Virus record (IMG/VR): IMGVR_UViG_3300027668_000008
Span: 186,001 to 250,000 of that record
Strand: one strand, 5' to 3'
Length of the DNA stretch: 64,000 nucleotides
The notes under the pieces are model-generated. The model was not told the origin of the DNA. It did no database searches and was given only the letters and a program-made list of their open reading frames with translations. Positions within the stretch are counted from its first letter, which is position 1. Every line of letters begins with the position of its first letter. A program made the position numbers and the translations under genes. Shown here piece after piece: positions 15,877-59,306 of the stretch.

Positions 15877-18800
15877 TTAAATAGAGCCTGTATTTTGGAT
15901 ACGAACTGGTATGTAGATGTATTCAACCGCTTTAACTGGTTCAATAGCAATGTCTATATACAACTCGTTTCTGTCAATTCTATCATTTGTGTTGTTTGTT
16001 TCGTCACATACAACCAAATAATCATAAAGACCACGTTTCGCAACTAAATCATTCATTAATTGCTCAACAACTTGTTTTACTTCATCACGTGTTAGTTTAT
16101 CGTTAGGTTCAAAAACAAAAGGTTTTGTAATAACTGCTAAACGTTCACGTATATAAGCAGTAAGTCTAGATACATTAATACGATCTAAAGCACTCGCTGT
16201 TGCCGTTTTAGTTTTGTTACCATAGTTTAATACACCGTTGCCTGGTAAGAATGTAATTGGGTTAATACTGTTTTCGTATAAAGTATCTCTTAAAGATTCT
16301 CTAACTCCAACACTAGTAAATTCACCAGTTGCTACATCAATATATCCTAAGCCTGTTGCGTTATCAACTATACCACGTCTTGTGCCTGCCGGAGCAAACC
16401 AAGGATAACTAGCGTCATCTGAACGAATCATTGTTCTTAACATCATATGACTTGAAGGAACTACAATACTATTACCATTTAAATCTGTAGTAATACCACT
16501 TGGGTAAAACACACCTAAGTATGTATCAGCAGTAACCATTCCATCATCGTTATTATCTGTTGCTAGTTTGGCATTAGTTGCCCAGTTTTGAATATCTGTA
16601 CTATTTGCCGCTAATCTCATTGGTGTGTCACCAATTACAAAAGCAGTGTTACGTCTATCATTGTTTAATGATACCATATTAGCAATTAGTTCTGGATATC
16701 CTGGTGCCGCCATTACGTTAAAGTTTCTTTGCTCTTCACGTAATTCTGAACTTGTATCAAGTGCAGATTTCATAGCCGCTACCACAACTTGACGTACTGC
16801 TTGTCTACCCATGAATGGAGAACCATCATTTTGTAAACCTGCTTTACTTACCCATGCATCTTTTTCCGTTGGTAATACTTTACCTGGGAAGTTTGTAGAG
16901 TTAAAGAAATCTTTCTTAAACTCTTTTACATTGTAAGAACTACGTCTCATATTAAACATTAACATACCACGTGGGTAATTAGCCGCTAGTGGTACATCTA
17001 AGTCTGTGTAATCGTTTGTTAGTAAAGATTTAGTAGTTGTAATATCACCACTGACTACGTCTGTAGTTGCGTTACCCATATATCTTGCATCTGCAAATAG
17101 GATACCATCTTCACTAGTTTGATCTGTATTGTCTATTGTTACAAACTTGTCTGTGCCTGAAACTTGTTCCCATCTTTTAATAATTGGGAAGTTTTCTAAG
17201 TCACTTGTATCAACCCAAAGGTCACCGTAAACTAGTGCTGACTTATCTGACTGTTGTGTCGGTTCAGTTGCACTAACTAATGGACCATTTGGACTTGTTG
17301 TTGACAAGTCAAATCCTCTAGCATCTGTAGAAACATTTTGGTAACCTTTCCAAGTTGTACCGTTATGTATCATGATATCCATTTCATCAGTTACATTATG
17401 GAACCATAGTCTACCTGTTGCTGGATTAGTTGAAGGTTCAATTGATCCTGCTGTATAAACTAGTTGTTGGAAGTTACTTGCTACCAAGTTTCCTGCTGTT
17501 GCACCTTCTCTAAGGTATGTATTAGCAGTTGTAAAGCCTGCTGTAGCCAAAGGAGTGTTGTTTGTGTTTGCAAGTATCATAACGCCACCTAATGAGTGTG
17601 TTAATGTAATTGCTCCAGTTGAAGCCAAACTAGCAGTAACATAAGGAATATTAACTGTGTTAATATCATTTACTATATCTGACGCTGTTGTGCCTGTTGC
17701 TGTAACTGTGTAACCTGTAACTGTGTTAACGCCTTTTGCGGATGACGTAATTGTAAACGCATCACCAACAACAAATGTTGGTGCAGTAGCGGTACCAGTA
17801 ACAACTGTTGAACCTTTAACTTTTCTTTCGTATAATTTGTATAGTGTAAATCCACTTGAGTTTGTAAATGCGTGTGCGTAAACTGTACCTACATCTATAT
17901 TCAAACCGCCGCCTACTGAATCTAAACCGTATAATGCGTGTCTATCACCACGATACACATTTACTGCTTTAGCAACAAATTTGGCTAGTGTTGTACTGTA
18001 AGCACTTACATCAAACTTTGCTCCGTTATTTGGAGTTGTAGTTTTAATCCAAACACTACCTGTTGGCGCCGAAGTAGCATCTGCTGTTTTCCATTCTGGA
18101 ATAGATGTATGTGGTTGTTGTAGTACAGAGATAACATAGTATGTTGCCGCTGTTACACCAATGTCTGTTAATAATGTTCCACTAACGTTAGCAATAACAA
18201 TAGCATTGCTTGCCGCTGTAGATTGTCCATAAATTTCAATTTTACTATTTACTAGTGCCGCTGTAACGCCTGTAATAGATGCCGCATTAATGTCAGCAAC
18301 TGTTTGTGCATAAGTTGTACTAGTTGTAGTAACTGTTGTTCCGTTAATAGTAATGCTGTCGCCATTTGAAACAGTGCCGCCTGATGCAGTACCTTGTACA
18401 GTTGGAATTGCAGTATGCCAATTAGTTGTGCCTAATGCTTTCCATCCTGATGCAGTTCTTACACTTACAGTATTATTGTTAGTACTGGCATCAATCGCAT
18501 AATCGCCTGCTTTGCCTATTGAAGCAAGAGGTACATTACTTGAGATTTTAGTACTATCTGTAATTACTGTTGGAACTTTATTAGTAAAAGTTTGTGTTGT
18601 TGCATTCCATTCAAAAATACCAAATTTGGTTTTAGCAGTATCTAACCAATGAGTACCATTAACTGGTTTAGCAGTTGGTCTTCCTGATTGTCCTGTTAGT
18701 TCACCTAAGTCAACATCTGCTCTAACAATGTATGCTCTGTTACTTGCACCTAATAGTGAGTAAGCAGACATAAGGCCATATTCATTTTGTTCATAGCCGT

Positions 18801-46244: not shown

Positions 46245-46269
46245 AATCACCCTCCTTATTAAAGTTAGG

Positions 46270-46315
46270 TGCGTTCCTTCGCTATTGCTACTTCCGGCCT
46301 CAAAGGCTGAACGTT
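46270..46315 (-). ncRNA. glnA-type glutamine riboswitch
   Basis: AACGTTCA-GCCT-TTG-AGGC-CGGAAGTA-GCAATAGC-GAAGGAACGCA matches the glnA motif: P1 CGTTC/GAACG with E-loop GGAAGTA...GAAG. Confidence 0.85.
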
Positions 46316-55337: not shown

Positions 55338-55390
55338 GATAAATACTTTATAAGTATTATAGTGATAACACTATTATATGTTTATTTATC
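55338..55390. promoter_or_regulatory. Pair of opposing late promoters
   Basis: GATAAATA on + at 55338-55345 and on - at 55383-55390. Confidence 0.65.
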
Positions 55391-55401
55391 GGAGTCAAAA
55401 C

Positions 55402-56235
55402 ATGGAAAACAATCAAAACCCTTTGGTAGGGTATTTTCGTAAACCAGAAGTTTACTTGTCACTACCTAGTAAGGGAAAGTACTACAAACATGGTGTTTTA
55501 GACTTGCCACCTAACGGCGAACTTGGGATTTTCCCAATGACTGCTAGGGACGAGTTAGTCCTAAAAACACCAGACGCATTACTTAACGGTGCAAGTACCG
55601 TTGAAGTGATACAAAGTTGTGTGCCTGCTATTAACAATGCTTGGGAAATTCCTAGCATTGATATGGACACATTATTAATCGGTGTGCGTATTGCCACTTA
55701 TGGTGAGCAAATGGACATACAAATCGCTTGTAATAAGTGCCAAACACAAAACGAGTTTGGAATCGACTTAACTGCATTAATGGATCAGACTAAGGACTGG
55801 AAGTTCGAAGAAGATTTGGAAATTGGTGATTTAAAACTTACATTTAAACCACTAACTTACCAAGAACTAAATGCTGAAAGTTTGCGTAACTTTGAAGAAT
55901 CAAAGATTATGAAAATCGTTAACAACGACAGTCTAGATGATGAAAAGAAACGTGAAATGTTTCAAGATGCATTCTTAAGACTTACTGCATTAACAGTTGA
56001 CTTAATTGGTAAAACAATATGTAAAGTTGAAAGTCCAAATGGCGTAACTGAAGACAGAGCTCACATTGCTGAGTTTGTACAAAATGTCGACAGAAAAACA
56101 TTTAGTGCAATACAAGATCATCTAGATGGACAAAAAGATAAGAACTCTTTCAAACAGTTTGAAGGCGAATGCACTAATTGTGAAGCACATTTAAGTACTC
56201 CAATTATGTTCGACAATTCCAATTTTTTCGCCTAA
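55402..56235 (+). CDS. gp26: Baseplate hub protein / tail assembly chaperone (gp26-like)
   Basis: LPSKG, MTARDE, IRIATYGE and two CxxC motifs; ends NFFA; GGAG RBS favours ATG 55402. Confidence 0.8.
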   Translation: MENNQNPLVGYFRKPEVYLSLPSKGKYYKHGVLDLPPNGELGIFPMTARDELVLKTPDALLNGASTVEVIQSCVPAINNAWEIPSIDMDTLLIGVRIATYGEQMDIQIACNKCQTQNEFGIDLTALMDQTKDWKFEEDLEIGDLKLTFKPLTYQELNAESLRNFEESKIMKIVNNDSLDDEKKREMFQDAFLRLTALTVDLIGKTICKVESPNGVTEDRAHIAEFVQNVDRKTFSAIQDHLDGQKDKNSFKQFEGECTNCEAHLSTPIMFDNSNFFA

Positions 56236-56459
56236 GGCTTCTGAGTCTCGCTAACGATGAGATCGGACAGTTAGTTAAAGACTATGACAAGGAAGCCCAA
56301 AATCTTAAAAAAGAATTGGTGAGAATAGTATGGTATATGAGAGGTGGAATACACTTGGATCAAGCCTATAACTTGTCACGGAATGATATGAAGGATATAT
56401 CTGGTGTTATCGAAGAGAATATTAAGACAACTCAGAAAACTGGATTACCTTTAATCTAA
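56223..56459 (+). CDS. gp51-like ORF, probably reached by a -1 frameshift from gp26
   Basis: Open -1 frame FFRLRLLSLANDEIGQ...WYMRGG...GLPLI with no 5' start codon; begins at T TTT TTC. Confidence 0.7.
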   Translation, partial: FFRLRLLSLANDEIGQLVKDYDKEAQNLKKELVRIVWYMRGGIHLDQAYNLSRNDMKDISGVIEENIKTTQKTGLPLI

Positions 56460-56665
56460 TATGTTCATGACTATACATTATAATCACTTACATCCATAAA
56501 CATTTTATAAGATTACTAAAAGATATACTTCGTATATCTAATAACTTCACTATCGTTCGTTATTAATTTTCTTTTAGAGTTTTTAGTAGATAATACTATT
56601 AATTGAATAACTGAATATTAAACAATATACTTTTAATACATATTAAGTATAAGAGCGAAGCGATA
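56460..56665. other. AT-rich non-coding tract with hairpins, candidate replication origin
   Basis: No ORF; AGATATAC-TTC-GTATATCT hairpin at 56521-56539; very low GC. Confidence 0.35.
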
Positions 56666-57060
56666 GTCATCATGTAGATTGTTTCAGTCAGACGGAACCA
56701 CTTACGGTTCCGTCAAATGCCTTCATGTGAGTTCGCCACAGCCCGACTATTGGAAGTAAGTATTTTATCGCAACTCTATGGGTTCTAGTCTTTCCCACAC
56801 TTACACTGATCCTACTTTCGTAGTCTATTTCCTCGTTCCGATTGAAATAGTTTTTAAGAGTTATATGCGTTTGTCATACGTTAGCAATCGTACTATACTA
56901 ACCGGTGAGCCCAATTTGTTTGATGGCTTCCACACTCTGGTGTGTTGATCGGTATGTTGCGTGTGTCCCTTTACGGGTACTTTTTCCACAGTGGATAGTT
57001 AAACTGGCCCACTAACCTTATGTGCTAATTGATTTGCCATAATGATTGCTGATTTTGTGC
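56665..57060 (-). ncRNA. Candidate large structured RNA (~400 nt)
   Basis: ORF-free, higher GC than flanks, many stems including CTAC-GAAA-GTAG and a perfect 9-bp hairpin. Confidence 0.55.
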
Positions 57061-57570
57061 CTATGCACACAGAGTCTTAACTCTGTCTGCGTTTCTTTGA
57101 AAGAATTCTTCGAAGCCTGTGATATGCCATGTTTTGTGTTTTGGGGAATTGTATGTGAATTGCCGTGATGTGATGAGTTGATGTGCGCCTGGGGTTGCTA
57201 TAAATTTGCCTTTGTTATTAAACTTCATTATTAAAATATTGAAGTCGCCATCATCTGCCGCGTCCATTAATTGGTCCAGCCAGTCCTCCAGCATACGAAC
57301 CTTGTCGTGTGTGAGCAGTTGATGAAATGGAAAGTCTTTATACGATTTACATTCCGCATTAAATTTTGGAAACGATTGTCCAGGAATAATATCTCCTTTA
57401 AATCCACGTATTTGACCTTCGTGTAATACTTCTTTACGAACAGTATTTTGTCCGCCTACATAAGCGCCTGAGCCCGGAGCTCTAATAAAAGATTCGTTGT
57501 ATAAATCGGATAAGAAACGTGCAACGTCTCTTTCCCAATTACTTCCTTTTGCTTTTTGCTTGTTTGGCAT
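57061..57570 (-). CDS. Holliday junction resolvase-like PD-(D/E)XK nuclease
   Basis: KGSNWER, RAPGSG, GDI and ECK motifs. Confidence 0.75.
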   Translation of the reverse strand: MPNKQKAKGSNWERDVARFLSDLYNESFIRAPGSGAYVGGQNTVRKEVLHEGQIRGFKGDIIPGQSFPKFNAECKSYKDFPFHQLLTHDKVRMLEDWLDQLMDAADDGDFNILIMKFNNKGKFIATPGAHQLITSRQFTYNSPKHKTWHITGFEEFFQRNADRVKTLCA

Positions 57571-57784
57571 TCTTCTTCCTATGTATGTTTAATAGTAACA
57601 CCTTTTGGTGGTACTCGTCAATCTTTTTTTCTGCATAGAAAGGAAATAATGTTGGAACAAAACCGTGTATGATGCTAATGATACCTGTAAGTATCAAATC
57701 CAATCCTGCCACGACGGCAAACTTGGTATGCTCATAATAGGTCTTTCCGGCTTCTTTTAGATGTGCCTTAATTGCCCTTTTCAT
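57539..57784 (-). CDS. Small hydrophobic protein
   Basis: HLKEAGKTYYEH...IIHGFVP.LF pattern (DUF6356-like, from recall). Confidence 0.6.
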   Translation of the reverse strand: MKRAIKAHLKEAGKTYYEHTKFAVVAGLDLILTGIISIIHGFVPTLFPFYAEKKIDEYHQKVLLLNIHRKKNAKQAKSKRK

Positions 57785-59126
57785 AGATTCCCTTTAACTT
57801 ATTGATGTTCGGCTTTCCTAGAACGTTAAGCTCGATGTGTGTAACTAATTTATCCACCGATATACCGTTGTCAGCCAACTTCTGAACTAACTGTTTTACA
57901 TTCACGTCTTTATGTTGCATAACCACTACAACGTGTGTCTGAGATATGCTAAACACACAACAGTATCCTTCTAACCAATTTGGTACAAGTTGTTGTGGAT
58001 TGATTAGTTGGTCGTCAATTCTTATTAAGTCGCTATTGCGTTTTTCAAAATAAAATGTATCTGCGTCAGCACTTACAATATCTTGAGTAACAAATATATC
58101 TATAGATTCATCATTAATGCTTTTGCACATATGACTACTACCTTCGATTGTAAGTATCTCATTTTCGTTAATATCGTAACTGCCTGTGTTGTCGACTATA
58201 CTTCCCATTTCTTTACTATTATACAAGTCTAAGTTGTGCTTGTCAACGACTTTATGTATTAAAGGTGGTAAACATTCAGTAAGTCCATATATTACTGCAA
58301 CTTTTTCTACGCCTTGATTCTTAACCAACCTTCTAATAAACGAATTGTCTATTACACTACCGCCAGTTAAAACCCATTTAACATAATCAAAGTTACGCAA
58401 GTGTATTCCTTGCTTTGCATATGATTGAAAATGCACCGGAAAAATTAACATCATATCCGGTTTGTACTTGTCTAAATCTTCTGCGTTATAAGGATTGTCT
58501 AGTCTAGGTAGTACAATCCGTTTACTTGAAAACAATGCAGGAAAAAAGTAAACACTGCTCACACCTAAGTGAACAATATTATGGAAAAACCAACTTGTGT
58601 TTGCTTCTTTCCAATAAAGTCTTATACTGTCGTCTGTTGCACTCTCTACACTTTTATGAGTGTGTTGTATGCACTTAGGTACTCCAGTACTTCCACTTGT
58701 TAATGCTTCTATTAAAACTTCCGAATGATCGATGATATAAGTTTCAACACCTTCGAACATATCTTCAGTAACACTTATGTCGTCTAAATCTAAGTGAGTA
58801 CAATTATCAGCATGAATAGTACATGGGTGTATACCACGTGTTATCATTGCTTTAATATTTCTACTAGATGTGTATTCATTTGTTATTTCGTGTTCTCCAC
58901 TTATAACAATAATAAGTCCATAATCAATAGCCGCAAAAACACAGGCAAGGTGATGAAAGTCTTCTTGCATTGCAAGTCCAACTCTATCGCCCTTGACTAG
59001 GTTATTGTTCAAGAACAGTTGTTGGTACCCAGAAGCAAATCGAGATAAACTCTCTTTAGTCAACTGGGTACCGTTAATTAGATCAACTATTTCAAAATTA
59101 TTAGATAACTTTGTAATAGATATCAC
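57768..59126 (-). CDS. AMP-binding (ANL family) acyl-CoA-synthetase-like enzyme
   Basis: TSGSTGVPK, LTGG, YGLTE, TQD, R.SDLI and terminal LGKP motifs. Confidence 0.85.
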   Translation of the reverse strand: MISITKLSNNFEIVDLINGTQLTKESLSRFASGYQQLFLNNNLVKGDRVGLAMQEDFHHLACVFAAIDYGLIIVISGEHEITNEYTSSRNIKAMITRGIHPCTIHADNCTHLDLDDISVTEDMFEGVETYIIDHSEVLIEALTSGSTGVPKCIQHTHKSVESATDDSIRLYWKEANTSWFFHNIVHLGVSSVYFFPALFSSKRIVLPRLDNPYNAEDLDKYKPDMMLIFPVHFQSYAKQGIHLRNFDYVKWVLTGGSVIDNSFIRRLVKNQGVEKVAVIYGLTECLPPLIHKVVDKHNLDLYNSKEMGSIVDNTGSYDINENEILTIEGSSHMCKSINDESIDIFVTQDIVSADADTFYFEKRNSDLIRIDDQLINPQQLVPNWLEGYCCVFSISQTHVVVVMQHKDVNVKQLVQKLADNGISVDKLVTHIELNVLGKPNINKLKGIYEKGN

Positions 59127-59129
59127 AAT

Positions 59130-59306
59130 TTACATACCGTTCTTTTTTTCTTGGATCTCGGCACGTCTTGCTTTCGCAAGTTTGCCCATTTCACCTAAAG
59201 ACTTACGAGCTCTTGCCGCCGCGGCTTTTACGCCTTTGGTTTCAAATGCTTCGTTTTCTTTAAGGTACGTTTCGTAGTGTACTACGATGTCATCATGTAT
59301 TGCCAT
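59130..59306 (-). CDS. Histone H1-like (Hc1-type) small basic protein; not in the ORF track
   Basis: 58 aa: MAIHDDIVVHYETYLKENEAFETKGVKAAAARARKSLGEMGKLAKARRAEIQEKKNGM; AGGAG RBS. Confidence 0.75.
   Translation of the reverse strand: MAIHDDIVVHYETYLKENEAFETKGVKAAAARARKSLGEMGKLAKARRAEIQEKKNGM

What the first reader, a model, noticed from the sequence alone, without database searches (positions are those of the whole stretch)
56460..57060. 600-nt non-coding island: large structured RNA running into an AT-rich origin-like tract
Seen: the largest ORF-free gap in the window, between convergent genes. The right ~400 nt has GACGGAACC/GGTTCCGTC (56691-56714), CTAC-GAAA-GTAG (56812-56823, GNRA loop on -), CTATTTC/GAAATAG, CACAC/GTGTG, and longer-range GTAAGT/ACTTAC and AACTCT/AGAGTT pairs. 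The left ~200 nt is very AT-rich with small hairpins. Known: T4 origins use a transcript forming an R-loop in a downstream unwinding element. Inference: an undescribed large ncRNA or ribozyme-like element, possibly a structured replication primer.
Basis: partly seen in the sequence, partly recalled or inferred. Interest (0 to 1): 0.75.

Follow-up and report, generated by a model that had tools for sequence, protein, structure and literature searches.

The report
Large structured phage RNA gene
The 600-base gap holds a real gene for a large, intricately folded non-coding RNA on the minus strand. The RNA is conserved in many uncultured aquatic T4-like phages, apparently related copies sit in some marine bacteria, its function is unknown, and only a fragment of a sister lineage has been catalogued before.

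Summary

The right-hand ~385 nt (56654-57038) is a structured RNA read on the minus strand. It starts at the stop codon of a PD-(D/E)XK nuclease gene. A conserved two-hairpin tail with a U-run lies at 56518-56564.

Compensatory base changes support at least 12 helices. The central domain is 92% paired with 18 of 34 pairs doubly changed. The 3' domain is 93% paired with 15 of 16 doubly changed. No shuffle out of 500 reached either covariation score.

The substitution pattern is not that of a coding region. Marine metatranscriptomes hold contigs over the RNA core only.

Relatives occupy the same syntenic gap in more than 150 IMG/VR contigs. In one sister lineage the 5' third is Rfam RF01718 (Polynucleobacter-1, function unknown). 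The window's own RNA hits no Rfam family.

An apparent co-varying direct repeat is best read as two strands of a quasi-palindromic helix: GAUGA·GAUGA with sheared G·A pairs, CAUG in this phage.

The AT-rich "origin-like" tract is mostly a lineage-private insert with chance-level folding, so the origin/primer reading is not supported. Function remains inferred; a trans-acting folded RNA or RNP scaffold is most likely.

The parts
56654..57038 (-). Core of the structured RNA (about 385 nt). It starts at the conserved GGCAA (57038) and runs to the small hairpin/S segment after R2.
   Evidence: Conserved at 82% in L004-L008, 76% in L010 and 68% in L009. RNAalifold gives 94 pairs, 23 of them with double changes. 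The fold is specific to the minus strand. Metatranscriptome contigs cover 56716-57119.
56931..57027 (-). 5' domain. Hairpins are UAGC/GUUA (57024-57027 / 57013-57016), GUGGG/UCCAC (57008-57012 / 56991-56995), GUACC/GGGAC with a GUAAA loop (56976-56980 / 56965-56969) and CACAC/GUGUG (56940-56944 / 56931-56935). The invariant AAGGUU lies at 57014-57019.
   Evidence: Several pair types occur at 14/28, 30/49, 31/48, 61/76, 63/74, 64/73, 98/109 and 100/107 in 42 sequences. CACAC/GUGUG becomes CACUC/GAGUG in the 99%-identical L002.
56752..56908 (-). Central multi-helix domain. It contains GUACG/CGUAU (56889-56893 / 56876-56880). CUAUUUC/GAAAUAG (56844-56850 / 56825-56831) carries the invariant loop GGAACGAG (56832-56839). 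CUAC-GAAA-GUAG lies at 56812-56823. GUGGG/CCCAU is at 56794-56798 / 56778-56782. GUAAGU/ACUUAC is also in this domain. ACUCU/AGAGU (56857-56861 / 56773-56777) is a possible pseudoknot.
   Evidence: Model R2 was aligned to 38 distinct sequences. 92.2% of cells are paired, 18 of 34 pairs change on both sides, and the score is 0.344 against 0.158 for shuffles (0/500); slid controls give 0.04-0.08. ACUCU/AGAGU shows UA/AU/GC and UA/CG exchanges.
56721..56735 (-). Module R1: CGAACUC + ACAUGAAG.
   Evidence: Invariant in 46 cluster-A sequences. Its heptamer always equals that of R2.
56691..56714 (-). Conserved 9-bp hairpin GACGGAACC-GUAAGU-GGUUCCGUC between R1 and R2.
   Evidence: 10-pair helix, 95.9% paired, with 9 pairs changed on both sides across clusters A and C and the Rhodobacteraceae copies.
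56668..56690 (-). Junction UGACUGAAAC (56681-56690) and module R2, AAUCU + ACAUGAUG (56668-56680).
   Evidence: Invariant block. RNAalifold pairs UCACAUG of R1 with CAUGAUGA of R2. The 3' domain folds with z -3.2.
56565..56653 (-). AT-rich linker. It is a lineage-private insertion and not part of the conserved element.
   Evidence: Absent from L004-L010. Folds no better than shuffles, z +0.32.
56540..56564 (-). Tail hairpin 1: AAUAAC-GA-AC-GAUA-GU-GAA-GUUAUU, that is a stem, a tandem G·A internal loop, 2 bp and a GNRA loop.
   Evidence: Stem covaries (AAUAAC/GUUAUU, AACAAC/GUUGUU, AAGAAC/GUUCUU). The motif is kept in clusters A, B and C. It is single copy in the genome.
56518..56539 (-). Tail hairpin 2, AGAUAUAC-GAA-GUAUAUCU, followed by UUU: a likely intrinsic terminator of the minus-strand transcript.
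   Evidence: Compensatory AUAUAC/GUAUAU to AUGUAC/GUACAU change in L005. MFE of the two hairpins together is -11 kcal/mol. The consensus terminator scan missed it because the stem is AT-rich.
57039..57061 (-). 23-nt insert private to the window lineage, lying between the nuclease stop codon and the RNA start.
   Evidence: Absent in L004-L010, where the RNA starts right at the stop codon.
57061..57570 (-). Upstream gene on the same strand: a PD-(D/E)XK nuclease (putative Holliday-junction resolvase).
   Evidence: Pfam PF24608 at 8.6e-23 and PHROG 244.

Best explanation
The gap contains a gene for a large, highly structured non-coding RNA on the minus strand. The core is about 385 nt (57038 to 56654), or about 520 nt if the transcript runs to the conserved tail at 56518.

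Shown:
- It belongs to a family that fills the same ORF-free gap in many uncultured aquatic T4-like phages. That gap lies downstream of a nuclease gene and convergent with the small-ORF/gp26 baseplate-hub genes.
- It folds into at least a dozen helices kept by compensatory changes.
- It is not coding.
- Contigs of the RNA core occur in marine RNA libraries.

Inferred:
- It is transcribed with, or just after, the nuclease gene and ends at the tail hairpin plus U-run.
- The two 'repeat' modules R1 and R2 are the two strands of a quasi-palindromic helix. In most relatives this is GAUGA·GAUGA with tandem sheared G·A pairs around a U·U; in this phage it is a Watson-Crick CAUG. The helix clamps the conserved hairpin into a compact 3' domain.
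- GNRA loops and invariant unpaired blocks (AAGGUU, GGAACGAG, UGACUGAAACAAUCU) make tertiary contacts or a binding surface.

Most likely mode of action, by inference only: about 0.4 that it acts in trans as a stable folded RNA that scaffolds or sequesters a protein through its G·A-rich platforms. About 0.2 goes to a ribozyme or a self-assembling RNA. The rest goes to the rivals. The confidence given below is for 'functional structured RNA gene on the minus strand', not for the mode of action.
For: Conservation at coding-like levels without an ORF.

RNAalifold gives 94 pairs, 23 with double changes. The fold is strand-specific.

Helices were re-checked on 42 full-length relatives as little as 60% identical. 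Structure-aware counts: the 3' domain is 93.3% paired with 15 of 16 pairs doubly changed, score 0.554 against 0.148 (0/500). The central domain is 92.2% paired with 18 of 34 doubly changed, score 0.344 against 0.158 (0/500). Slid controls give 0.04-0.12.

There is no third-position bias (27/19/27, against 15/8/39 in the nuclease gene). Indels are 1, 2, 5 and 11 nt, and every frame has 5-10 stops.

The syntenic gap measures 385-530 nt in about 60 loci whose nuclease identity falls as low as 56%. 73 IMG/VR contigs carry the cluster-A signature, and more than 108 carry the cluster-C type.

The model of the 3' domain finds cluster C at the syntenic spot on the right strand (E 7e-4 to 0.9).

The R1/R2 heptamers are the same in both modules in about 97% of 143 distinct sequences. 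This includes position 7, which the search pattern did not fix. Nearly every variant is a quasi-palindrome.

Contigs from four marine metatranscriptomes, from four different studies, cover 56716-57119. None covers the AT tract.

The RNA motifs are single copy in the genome.
Against: No direct evidence of function, of a partner or of the transcript ends.

The RNA-library contigs have no strand information. The runs were chosen with this very stretch, so depth against the flanks is biased, and DNA carry-over cannot be excluded.

The alignments used for the pair counts were fitted to the models.

The R1·R2 pairing is invariant within cluster A. In cluster C it rests on non-Watson-Crick pairs that cannot be scored with these tools.

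The model hits to cluster C and to the bacterial copies are individually marginal (E 1e-3 to 1).

No promoter was found.
Confidence: 0.85

Rival explanations
1. Cis-acting 3' UTR element of the nuclease operon. In this reading the structure protects the upstream mRNA from 3' exonucleases or insulates convergent transcription, and it has no function of its own in trans.
For: The RNA starts at the stop codon of the upstream nuclease gene in two lineages whose nucleases differ (PD-(D/E)XK and GIY-YIG-like). It ends in a terminator-like hairpin. No promoter was found.
Against: About 400 nt with a dozen or more covarying helices and long invariant unpaired blocks is far more than mRNA stabilisation needs. 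In several relatives other genes lie between the nuclease gene and the RNA (L017, L038). Apparent relatives of the RNA (3' domain and tail) stand alone in Rhodobacteraceae chromosomes beside unrelated genes.
Confidence: 0.1
2. Replication origin or structured primer RNA. The transcript would form a persistent hybrid in the AT-rich tract and prime DNA synthesis, like T4 ori(uvsY)/ori(34) or ColE1 RNA II.
For: The locus lies next to the baseplate-hub genes, as T4 ori(uvsY) does (from my own knowledge of the T4 map, not tested here). An AT-rich tract (20% GC) follows the RNA. The genome-wide cumulative GC-skew minimum is only 5-6 kb away.
Against: The AT-rich tract is mostly a private insertion of this lineage and is missing from relatives that keep the RNA. 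It has no structure beyond chance and no iterons. The skew minimum coincides with the switch of gene orientation rather than with the element. The conserved 3' end looks like a terminator.
Confidence: 0.05
3. The two co-varying modules R1 and R2 are not paired with each other. Instead they are two equal binding sites for one partner: a dimeric protein, or two copies of a complementary nucleic acid (a guide-like use).
For: The heptamers are identical in both modules across 143 sequences in many variants. This is also what two sites read by one reader would show.
Against: Nearly every variant observed is itself a quasi-palindrome (GAUGA, CAUG, ACGA, UCGG, GAUAA). Two independent sites would not need that, but a helix made of two like strands would. 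No complementary copies were found in the RNA. Eight-mers are too short to find targets in the genome.
Confidence: 0.2
4. A decayed protein gene, or a gene read in another genetic code.
For: It is the largest ORF-free gap, lying between genes.
Against: There are 5-10 stops in every frame, no codon periodicity, and indels of 1, 2, 5 and 11 nt. Variation is concentrated in paired positions with compensation. The flanking genes read normally in table 11.
Confidence: 0.01

Closest known systems
Polynucleobacter-1 RNA motif (Rfam RF01718; Weinberg et al. 2010, PMC2864571)
   Same: It is the 5' 135-141 nt of the RNA that fills the same syntenic gap in a sister lineage (L015: 96.4 bits, starting 6 nt after the nuclease stop; L278: 101.5 bits). 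Those RNAs continue into the same twin-module 3' domain and the same tail as the window RNA. Function is unknown. The paper lists it for Burkholderiales and fresh water/estuary.
   Different: The window RNA does not match the RF01718 model at E<=10. Its 5' domain has other hairpins and shares only a loosely similar start (GGC...) and a small hairpin junction. RF01718 describes a 141-nt motif thought to be possibly cis-regulatory, whereas the unit seen here is 400-520 nt at the 3' end of an operon.
GOLLD and ROOL (large ornate RNAs frequent in phages and prophages; cryo-EM in PMC12286853)
   Same: Size class (several hundred nt), many covarying helices, invariant unpaired blocks, carriage by phages and mobile elements, unknown function. 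A palindromic element could allow self-association.
   Different: No sequence or structure match (Rfam holds both). There are no adjacent tRNA genes. Oligomerisation was not tested.
Tandem sheared G·A motifs (box C/D K-turn core, loop E)
   Same: GAUGA paired antiparallel with GAUGA gives G·A, A·G, U·U, G·A, A·G. Tail hairpin 1 has a UGA/GAA or GA/GAA internal loop. Weak matches to archaeal C/D-box models fall on these segments (E 0.5-9).
   Different: No 3-nt bulge next to a Watson-Crick C-stem could be placed, so this is not a canonical K-turn. The Rfam matches are far below threshold. In the window lineage the motif is replaced by a Watson-Crick CAUG.
T4 ori(uvsY)/ori(34) R-loop origins and ColE1 RNA II
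   Same: An RNA next to an AT-rich stretch, in a T4-like genome near the baseplate-hub genes.
   Different: The AT tract is not conserved, the RNA ends in a terminator-like hairpin, and elaborate covarying structure is not a feature of the T4 origin transcripts (the last point from my own knowledge).

Membership tests
Polynucleobacter-1 RNA (RF01718) | Match to the Rfam covariance model at or above 37 bits | tested here: not met
   No match in window 56200-57300 at E<=10, nor at the gathering threshold in the whole window. The test is met by the syntenic relatives L015 (96.4 bits) and L278 (101.5 bits).
Polynucleobacter-1-containing long RNA (the family proposed here) | Same genomic slot, twin-module 3' domain and two-hairpin tail | tested here: met
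   Synteny. The 3' domain model R1 scores 96.6 bits in the window and hits L032 and L064 (the L015 subgroup) and other cluster-C loci. The tail is seen.
Group I intron | P3-P7 pseudoknot core with a G-binding site, flanking exons, match to Rfam Intron_gpI | tested here: not met
   No Rfam match. A candidate CAGACU/AGUC pair has two hairpins between 'P7' and 'P3'', which is the wrong topology. The element lies between two stop codons of convergent genes, so there is no exon to join.
RNase P RNA | P4 helix from the conserved regions (GGAAAGUCC ... ACAGAA), Rfam match | tested here: not met
   No Rfam match at E<=10 or in eight relatives. GGGAAAGAC sits in a hairpin loop rather than in a long-range P4.
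tmRNA | tRNA-like acceptor/T arm plus a tag reading frame | tested here: not met
   ARAGORN finds none in the window. The genome has its own permuted tmRNA elsewhere.
GOLLD / ROOL / HEARO / OLE / raiA | Match to the respective Rfam model | tested here: not met
T4-type R-loop origin | Promoter followed by a conserved AT-rich unwinding element; origin activity | tested here: inconclusive
   An AT tract is present but is not conserved in relatives. No promoter was recognised, and the skew minimum is 5-6 kb away. Origin activity is not testable here.
Intrinsic terminator (tail hairpin 2) | Stable hairpin followed by a U-run on the transcribed strand | tested here: inconclusive
   An 8-bp AT-rich stem with a GAA loop is followed by UUUU (56518-56539). 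The two hairpins together give -11 kcal/mol, and the stem covaries. The consensus scan, which requires 3 G-C pairs, did not list it.
Kink-turn / box C/D | C-stem, 3-nt bulge, tandem G·A pairs, NC-stem; Rfam C/D models | tested here: not met
   Only sub-threshold hits (sR6 at 19.9 bits against a cutoff of 60, sR32 at 19.9 against 40). No 3-nt bulge could be placed.
Protein-coding gene | Open frame, third-position excess of substitutions, indels in threes | tested here: not met

The most novel reading that the evidence does not exclude
This would be a new class of large ornate RNA shared by lytic T4-like phages and integrated elements of marine Rhodobacteraceae. Its quasi-palindromic G·A (or CAUG) element would mediate self-association into a dimer or higher assembly, as found for ROOL, GOLLD and OLE, or would form the core of an undescribed ribozyme. 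It would act in phage-host conflict or in recombination.
Probability: 0.2. Interest if true: 0.85.

Novelty: new variant of a known kind. Interest (0 to 1): 0.72.

Why it matters
Bacterial and phage RNAs longer than 300 nt with many covarying helices are rare, and those whose function is known are mostly ribozymes or RNP cores.

This family is abundant in uncultured aquatic T4-like phages: more than 150 contigs were found even under capped searches. It keeps a fixed genomic slot and appears to recur in bacterial genomic islands.

So far it has been catalogued only as a 141-nt fragment thought to be possibly cis-regulatory. Recognising the full 400-520-nt unit changes how RF01718 should be read.

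It also gives a defined target for structural work (cryo-EM, probing). Because apparently related copies sit in culturable strains (Nereida ignava CECT 5292, Rhodovulum bhavnagarense DSM 24766), it offers a practical route to genetics.

Tried and rejected
- **Group I intron.** A CAGACU/AGUC resemblance to the R/S elements was examined; the topology is wrong and there are no exons.
- **RNase P and tmRNA.** No matches; the genome has another tmRNA.
- **Hammerhead-like reading** of CUGA...GAAA and of tail hairpin 1. The spacing does not fit the core.
- **Coding or decayed ORF**.
- **Iterons or other origin signs**.
- **R1/R2 as guides to a repeated target.** The 8-mers occur 33 times in the genome, mostly in start-codon contexts, which is uninformative.
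- **Pairing between the segment after R2 and the loop of tail hairpin 1.** It looked complementary in the window, but in most relatives that segment forms its own small hairpin (AAUUGC-UUC-GCAAUU, which covaries). Dropped.
- **Long-range helix GGUUAGUAU/AUACUUACU** from the 8-sequence fold. It has many A·C mismatches in the larger set and is replaced by GUAAGU/ACUUAC plus another closing helix.
- **IS110 bridge-RNA idea** for the Nereida copies. A transposase C-terminus lies about 700 nt upstream in that genome only, not in Roseicyclus, so it is probably incidental.
- **Searches for cultured carriers.** No blastn match in GenBank phages or PLSDB plasmids for RNAs of clusters A, B and C or the Rhodobacteraceae type. 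PA5oct and SCTP-2, the nearest cultured phages by nuclease protein (about 40% identity), lack both the gap and any model hit.
- **The genome contigs pattern scan.** About 110 of 121 matches are what chance predicts for an 18-base pattern (my estimate is about 130). Only 10 of the 11 that passed the extra filters are used.
- **RNA model search of whole Rhodobacteraceae genomes.** It found nothing because of the search filters; a DNA query did.
- **Weak model hit at window 18610-18717.** It lies inside a 1058-aa ORF and is noise.
- **Literature searches.** No description of this RNA beyond RF01718.
Full report
**Setting**

The window is bases 186001-250000 of a 306.7-kb, 35.9% GC virus record. 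Its genes are T4-like but distant:
- a gp26-type baseplate hub gene at 55378-56235 (+)
- a conserved ORF of about 70 aa ending at 56459 (+)
- a PDDEXK_15 nuclease (PHROG label 'RusA-like Holliday junction resolvase') at 57061-57570 (-)
- further right on the minus strand, DUF6356, an AMP-binding enzyme, an Hc1 histone-like protein and a gp46/SbcC-like protein

The nearest cultured phages by nuclease protein are only about 40% identical: Salicola SCTP-2 and Pseudomonas PA5oct.

**Check of the observation**

With ORFs of at least 60 aa, the stretch is the largest ORF-free region of the whole genome. GC is 20% on the left (56460-56650) and 43% on the right.

Predicted folding is better than shuffled sequence only on the minus strand. 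The z-score is -2.59 on the minus strand against -0.83 on the plus strand.

**It is a conserved, structured, non-coding RNA on the minus strand**

Loci fetched through the nuclease and gp26 proteins show how well the right ~400 nt of the gap is kept. It is 82% identical in phages whose flanking proteins are 74-91% identical. It is 76% and 68% identical in two more distant phages.

The alignment alternates invariant blocks with stems that change on both sides:
- CUAUUUC/GAAAUAG becomes CUGUAAC/GUUACAG and CUGUAC/GUACAG
- CUAC-GAAA-GUAG becomes CUGC-GAAA-GCAG
- CACAC/GUGUG becomes CACUC/GAGUG in a 99%-identical relative

RNAalifold on eight sequences gives 94 pairs, 23 of them with double changes. 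The GNRA-type loops (GAAA, GUAA[A], GAUA) read correctly only on the minus strand.

A pattern taken from the invariant 3' blocks then found 73 IMG/VR contigs, 46 of them distinct and as little as 60% identical to the window. On 42 full-length sequences, most helices show two to four different standard pair types per position.

Two domain covariance models were built, and the sequences were re-aligned to them.

| Domain | Sequences | Cells paired | Pairs changed on both sides | Covariation score (observed vs shuffled) | Shuffles reaching observed |
|---|---|---|---|---|---|
| 3' domain | 36 matches (includes a few sub-threshold or antisense hits) | 93.3% | 15 of 16 | 0.554 vs 0.148 | 0 of 500 |
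| Central domain | 38 distinct | 92.2% | 18 of 34 | 0.344 vs 0.158 | 0 of 500 |

Partners slid by 1-3 columns score only 0.04-0.12. These alignments are fitted to the models and therefore lean towards them. The independent MAFFT-based counts agree with them.

A coding origin is excluded:
- Substitutions against L004 fall 27/19/27 over the three phases, against 15/8/39 in the neighbouring nuclease gene.
- Indels are 1, 2, 5 and 11 nt.
- Each frame has 5-10 stops.

**Anatomy in window coordinates (minus strand)**

- **5' end.** The RNA starts at the conserved GGCAA (57038). In close relatives this directly abuts the nuclease stop codon. The window has a private 23-nt insert there.
- **5' domain.** It has four hairpins and the invariant AAGGUU.
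- **Central domain (56752-56908).** It holds GUACG/CGUAU. It also holds CUAUUUC/GAAAUAG with the invariant loop GGAACGAG. The GAAA hairpin is here too, and it is expanded by about 50 nt in most relatives. The remaining helices are GUGGG/CCCAU and GUAAGU/ACUUAC. ACUCU/AGAGU also covaries, but it crosses two other helices of the model, so a pseudoknot is possible.
- **3' domain.** It consists of module R1 (56721-56735), a 9-bp hairpin (56691-56714), the invariant junction UGACUGAAAC and module R2 (56668-56680).
- **Linker (56565-56653).** This AT-rich stretch is absent from close relatives and folds no better than shuffles (z +0.32).
- **Tail.** Hairpin 1 (56540-56564) is a stem, a tandem G·A internal loop, two base pairs and a GAUA loop. 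Hairpin 2 (56521-56539) is followed by a U-run. Both stems covary. The tail is kept even in distant lineages and is single copy in the genome.

**The 'direct repeat' puzzle**

R1 and R2 each carry a heptamer. It is the same in both modules of one phage but differs between phages.

| Heptamer | Where seen |
|---|---|
| ACAUGA(A/U) | this window and its cluster |
| (A/G)GAUGA(A/U/G) | most relatives |
| GACGAA, GUCGGA, AGAUAA, AACGAA | rare lineages |

Among 143 distinct sequences, both modules agree at the variable positions 1 and 7 in about 97%. Position 7 was not fixed by the search pattern.

Base pairing normally gives complementary covariation, not identical covariation. The exception is a helix made of two like strands, which requires a palindrome. 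All the variants are quasi-palindromes:
- GAUGA against GAUGA gives G·A, A·G, U·U, G·A, A·G
- CAUG is a Watson-Crick palindrome
- ACGA has a C-G/G-C core
- UCGG gives U·G, C-G, G-C, G·U

RNAalifold had already paired R1 with R2 in the window's cluster. I therefore read R1·R2 as a helix that closes the 3' domain. This is inference. Two equal sites for one partner, or pairing between molecules, remain possible.

**Family**

The gap between the nuclease gene and the convergent small ORF/gp26 pair is 385-530 nt in about 45 of 69 loci whose nuclease identity falls as low as 56%. Where it is longer, extra genes have been inserted on one side of the RNA or the other.

By blastn the gap sequences form three clusters: A (the window's), B and C. 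Each is structured on its own.
- A and C share the 3' domain (nhmmer; model R1 at E 7e-4 to 0.9, always at the syntenic place and on the right strand).
- B and C appear, by eye, to share a 5' domain.
- All three share the tail.

In most cluster-A contigs the upstream gene is a 140-aa GIY-YIG-like nuclease rather than the PD-(D/E)XK one. The downstream small ORF and gp26 are constant.

An Rfam scan of eight relatives gave one strong hit. The 5' 135 nt of the L015-type RNA is RF01718, Polynucleobacter-1 (96.4 bits). The same holds for L278, where the twin modules follow about 190 nt downstream. Weinberg et al. 2010 list that motif for Burkholderiales and fresh water/estuary, as a probable RNA that is possibly cis-regulatory. 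I found no later work on it.

The window RNA itself matches no Rfam family at E<=10.

**Beyond phages**

A scan of bacterial genomes returned mostly chance matches. Ten hits, however, carry the full 3' domain signature. Four lie on T4-like phage-type contigs in MAGs. Six are in Rhodobacteraceae: Nereida ignava CECT 5292, Rhodovulum bhavnagarense DSM 24766, and Roseicyclus, Rhodobacter and Octadecabacter MAGs.

The Roseicyclus and Nereida copies are about 80% identical over roughly 590 nt. Shorter stretches (170-250 nt) match at 82-86% in three further genera. There are one to three matches per genome.

In Roseicyclus the copy lies on an 817-kb contig beside ParDE and two integrases. One Nereida copy lies about 700 nt from an IS110-type transposase end.

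Homology with the window RNA rests on the 3' domain and the tail only.

**Expression**

Six marine metatranscriptome runs hold 32-49% of the sampled words of the 601-nt stretch. Four runs from four different studies were laid on 4.5 kb. All of them have contigs over 56716-57119, and none has a contig over the AT tract. In two runs nothing else of the 4.5 kb is present.

This fits a stable transcript, with three caveats. The runs were selected with this stretch, contigs have no strand, and DNA carry-over is possible. The contig ends at 56716-56727 coincide with R1. They may simply reflect assembly-graph breaks at a block that related strains share.

**Origin reading**

- The AT tract is not conserved.
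- There are no iterons.
- No promoter was recognised.
- The cumulative GC-skew minimum lies at genome 248-249 kb, 5-6 kb to the right, where gene orientation switches.

Nothing positively supports an origin or a primer RNA. The idea is not formally excluded.

**Verdict**

This is a genuine large structured RNA gene. It is a divergent member of a broad mobile-element RNA family that is mostly uncatalogued, and its function is unknown. Only the 5' piece of one sister lineage is in Rfam.

The most likely mode of action is a trans-acting folded RNA or RNP scaffold. A ribozyme or a self-assembling RNA is the more exciting possibility and remains open.

Noticed in passing
window 46268-46315 (-): Glutamine riboswitch aptamer (RF01739) at 52.6 bits against a gathering score of 35. 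It fits a marine phage and was not examined further.
   Followed up: no
genome G000:C1 150442-150775 and 108544-128617 (outside the window): ARAGORN finds a permuted (two-piece) tmRNA with tag ANNNYQPEMALAA, and eight tRNA genes.
   Followed up: no
window 57539-59306 (-): Between the SbcC/gp46-like gene and the nuclease gene lie an Hc1 histone-H1-like ORF (59130-59306), an AMP-binding enzyme (57768-59126) and a DUF6356 ORF (57539-57784). An Hc1-like ORF also sits in this slot in L095.
   Followed up: no
L095:4672-5094 (-) and most loci L090-L162: In the majority of cluster-A relatives, a 140-aa GIY-YIG-like nuclease replaces the PD-(D/E)XK nuclease directly upstream of the RNA. The family call rests on the motif seen by eye, not on a Pfam run.
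   Followed up: partly
L172:4010-4640 (-); L404, L408, L410; L405-L407, L409: Matches of about 170-590 nt at 80-86% identity, with the twin-module domain and tail, lie in Rhodobacteraceae assemblies. Nereida ignava has three on small contigs, and Roseicyclus has two. Neighbours include ParDE and integrases (L172) and an IS110-type transposase end (L404).
   Followed up: partly
L015:4522-4654; L278:3792-3936: Rfam's Polynucleobacter-1 motif is only the 5' third of a 400-nt RNA of T4-like freshwater phages. Its listing as a possible cis-regulator may need revision.
   Followed up: yes
A2 alignment columns ~270-325 (e.g. L092, L094): In most cluster-A RNAs the CUAC-GAAA-GUAG hairpin is expanded by about 50 nt into a branched insert containing CCGCGAAGCGG.
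   Followed up: no
L017, L038, L022, L031 (gaps of 2.5-3.7 kb): In several relatives extra genes are inserted between the nuclease gene and the RNA, or between the RNA and the small ORF. Their nature (for example homing endonucleases) was not examined.
   Followed up: no
window 56250-56459 (+): The conserved small ORF downstream of gp26 (about 70 aa, WYMRGG motif) has no Pfam or PHROG match. It accompanies gp26 in nearly all related loci checked.
   Followed up: no
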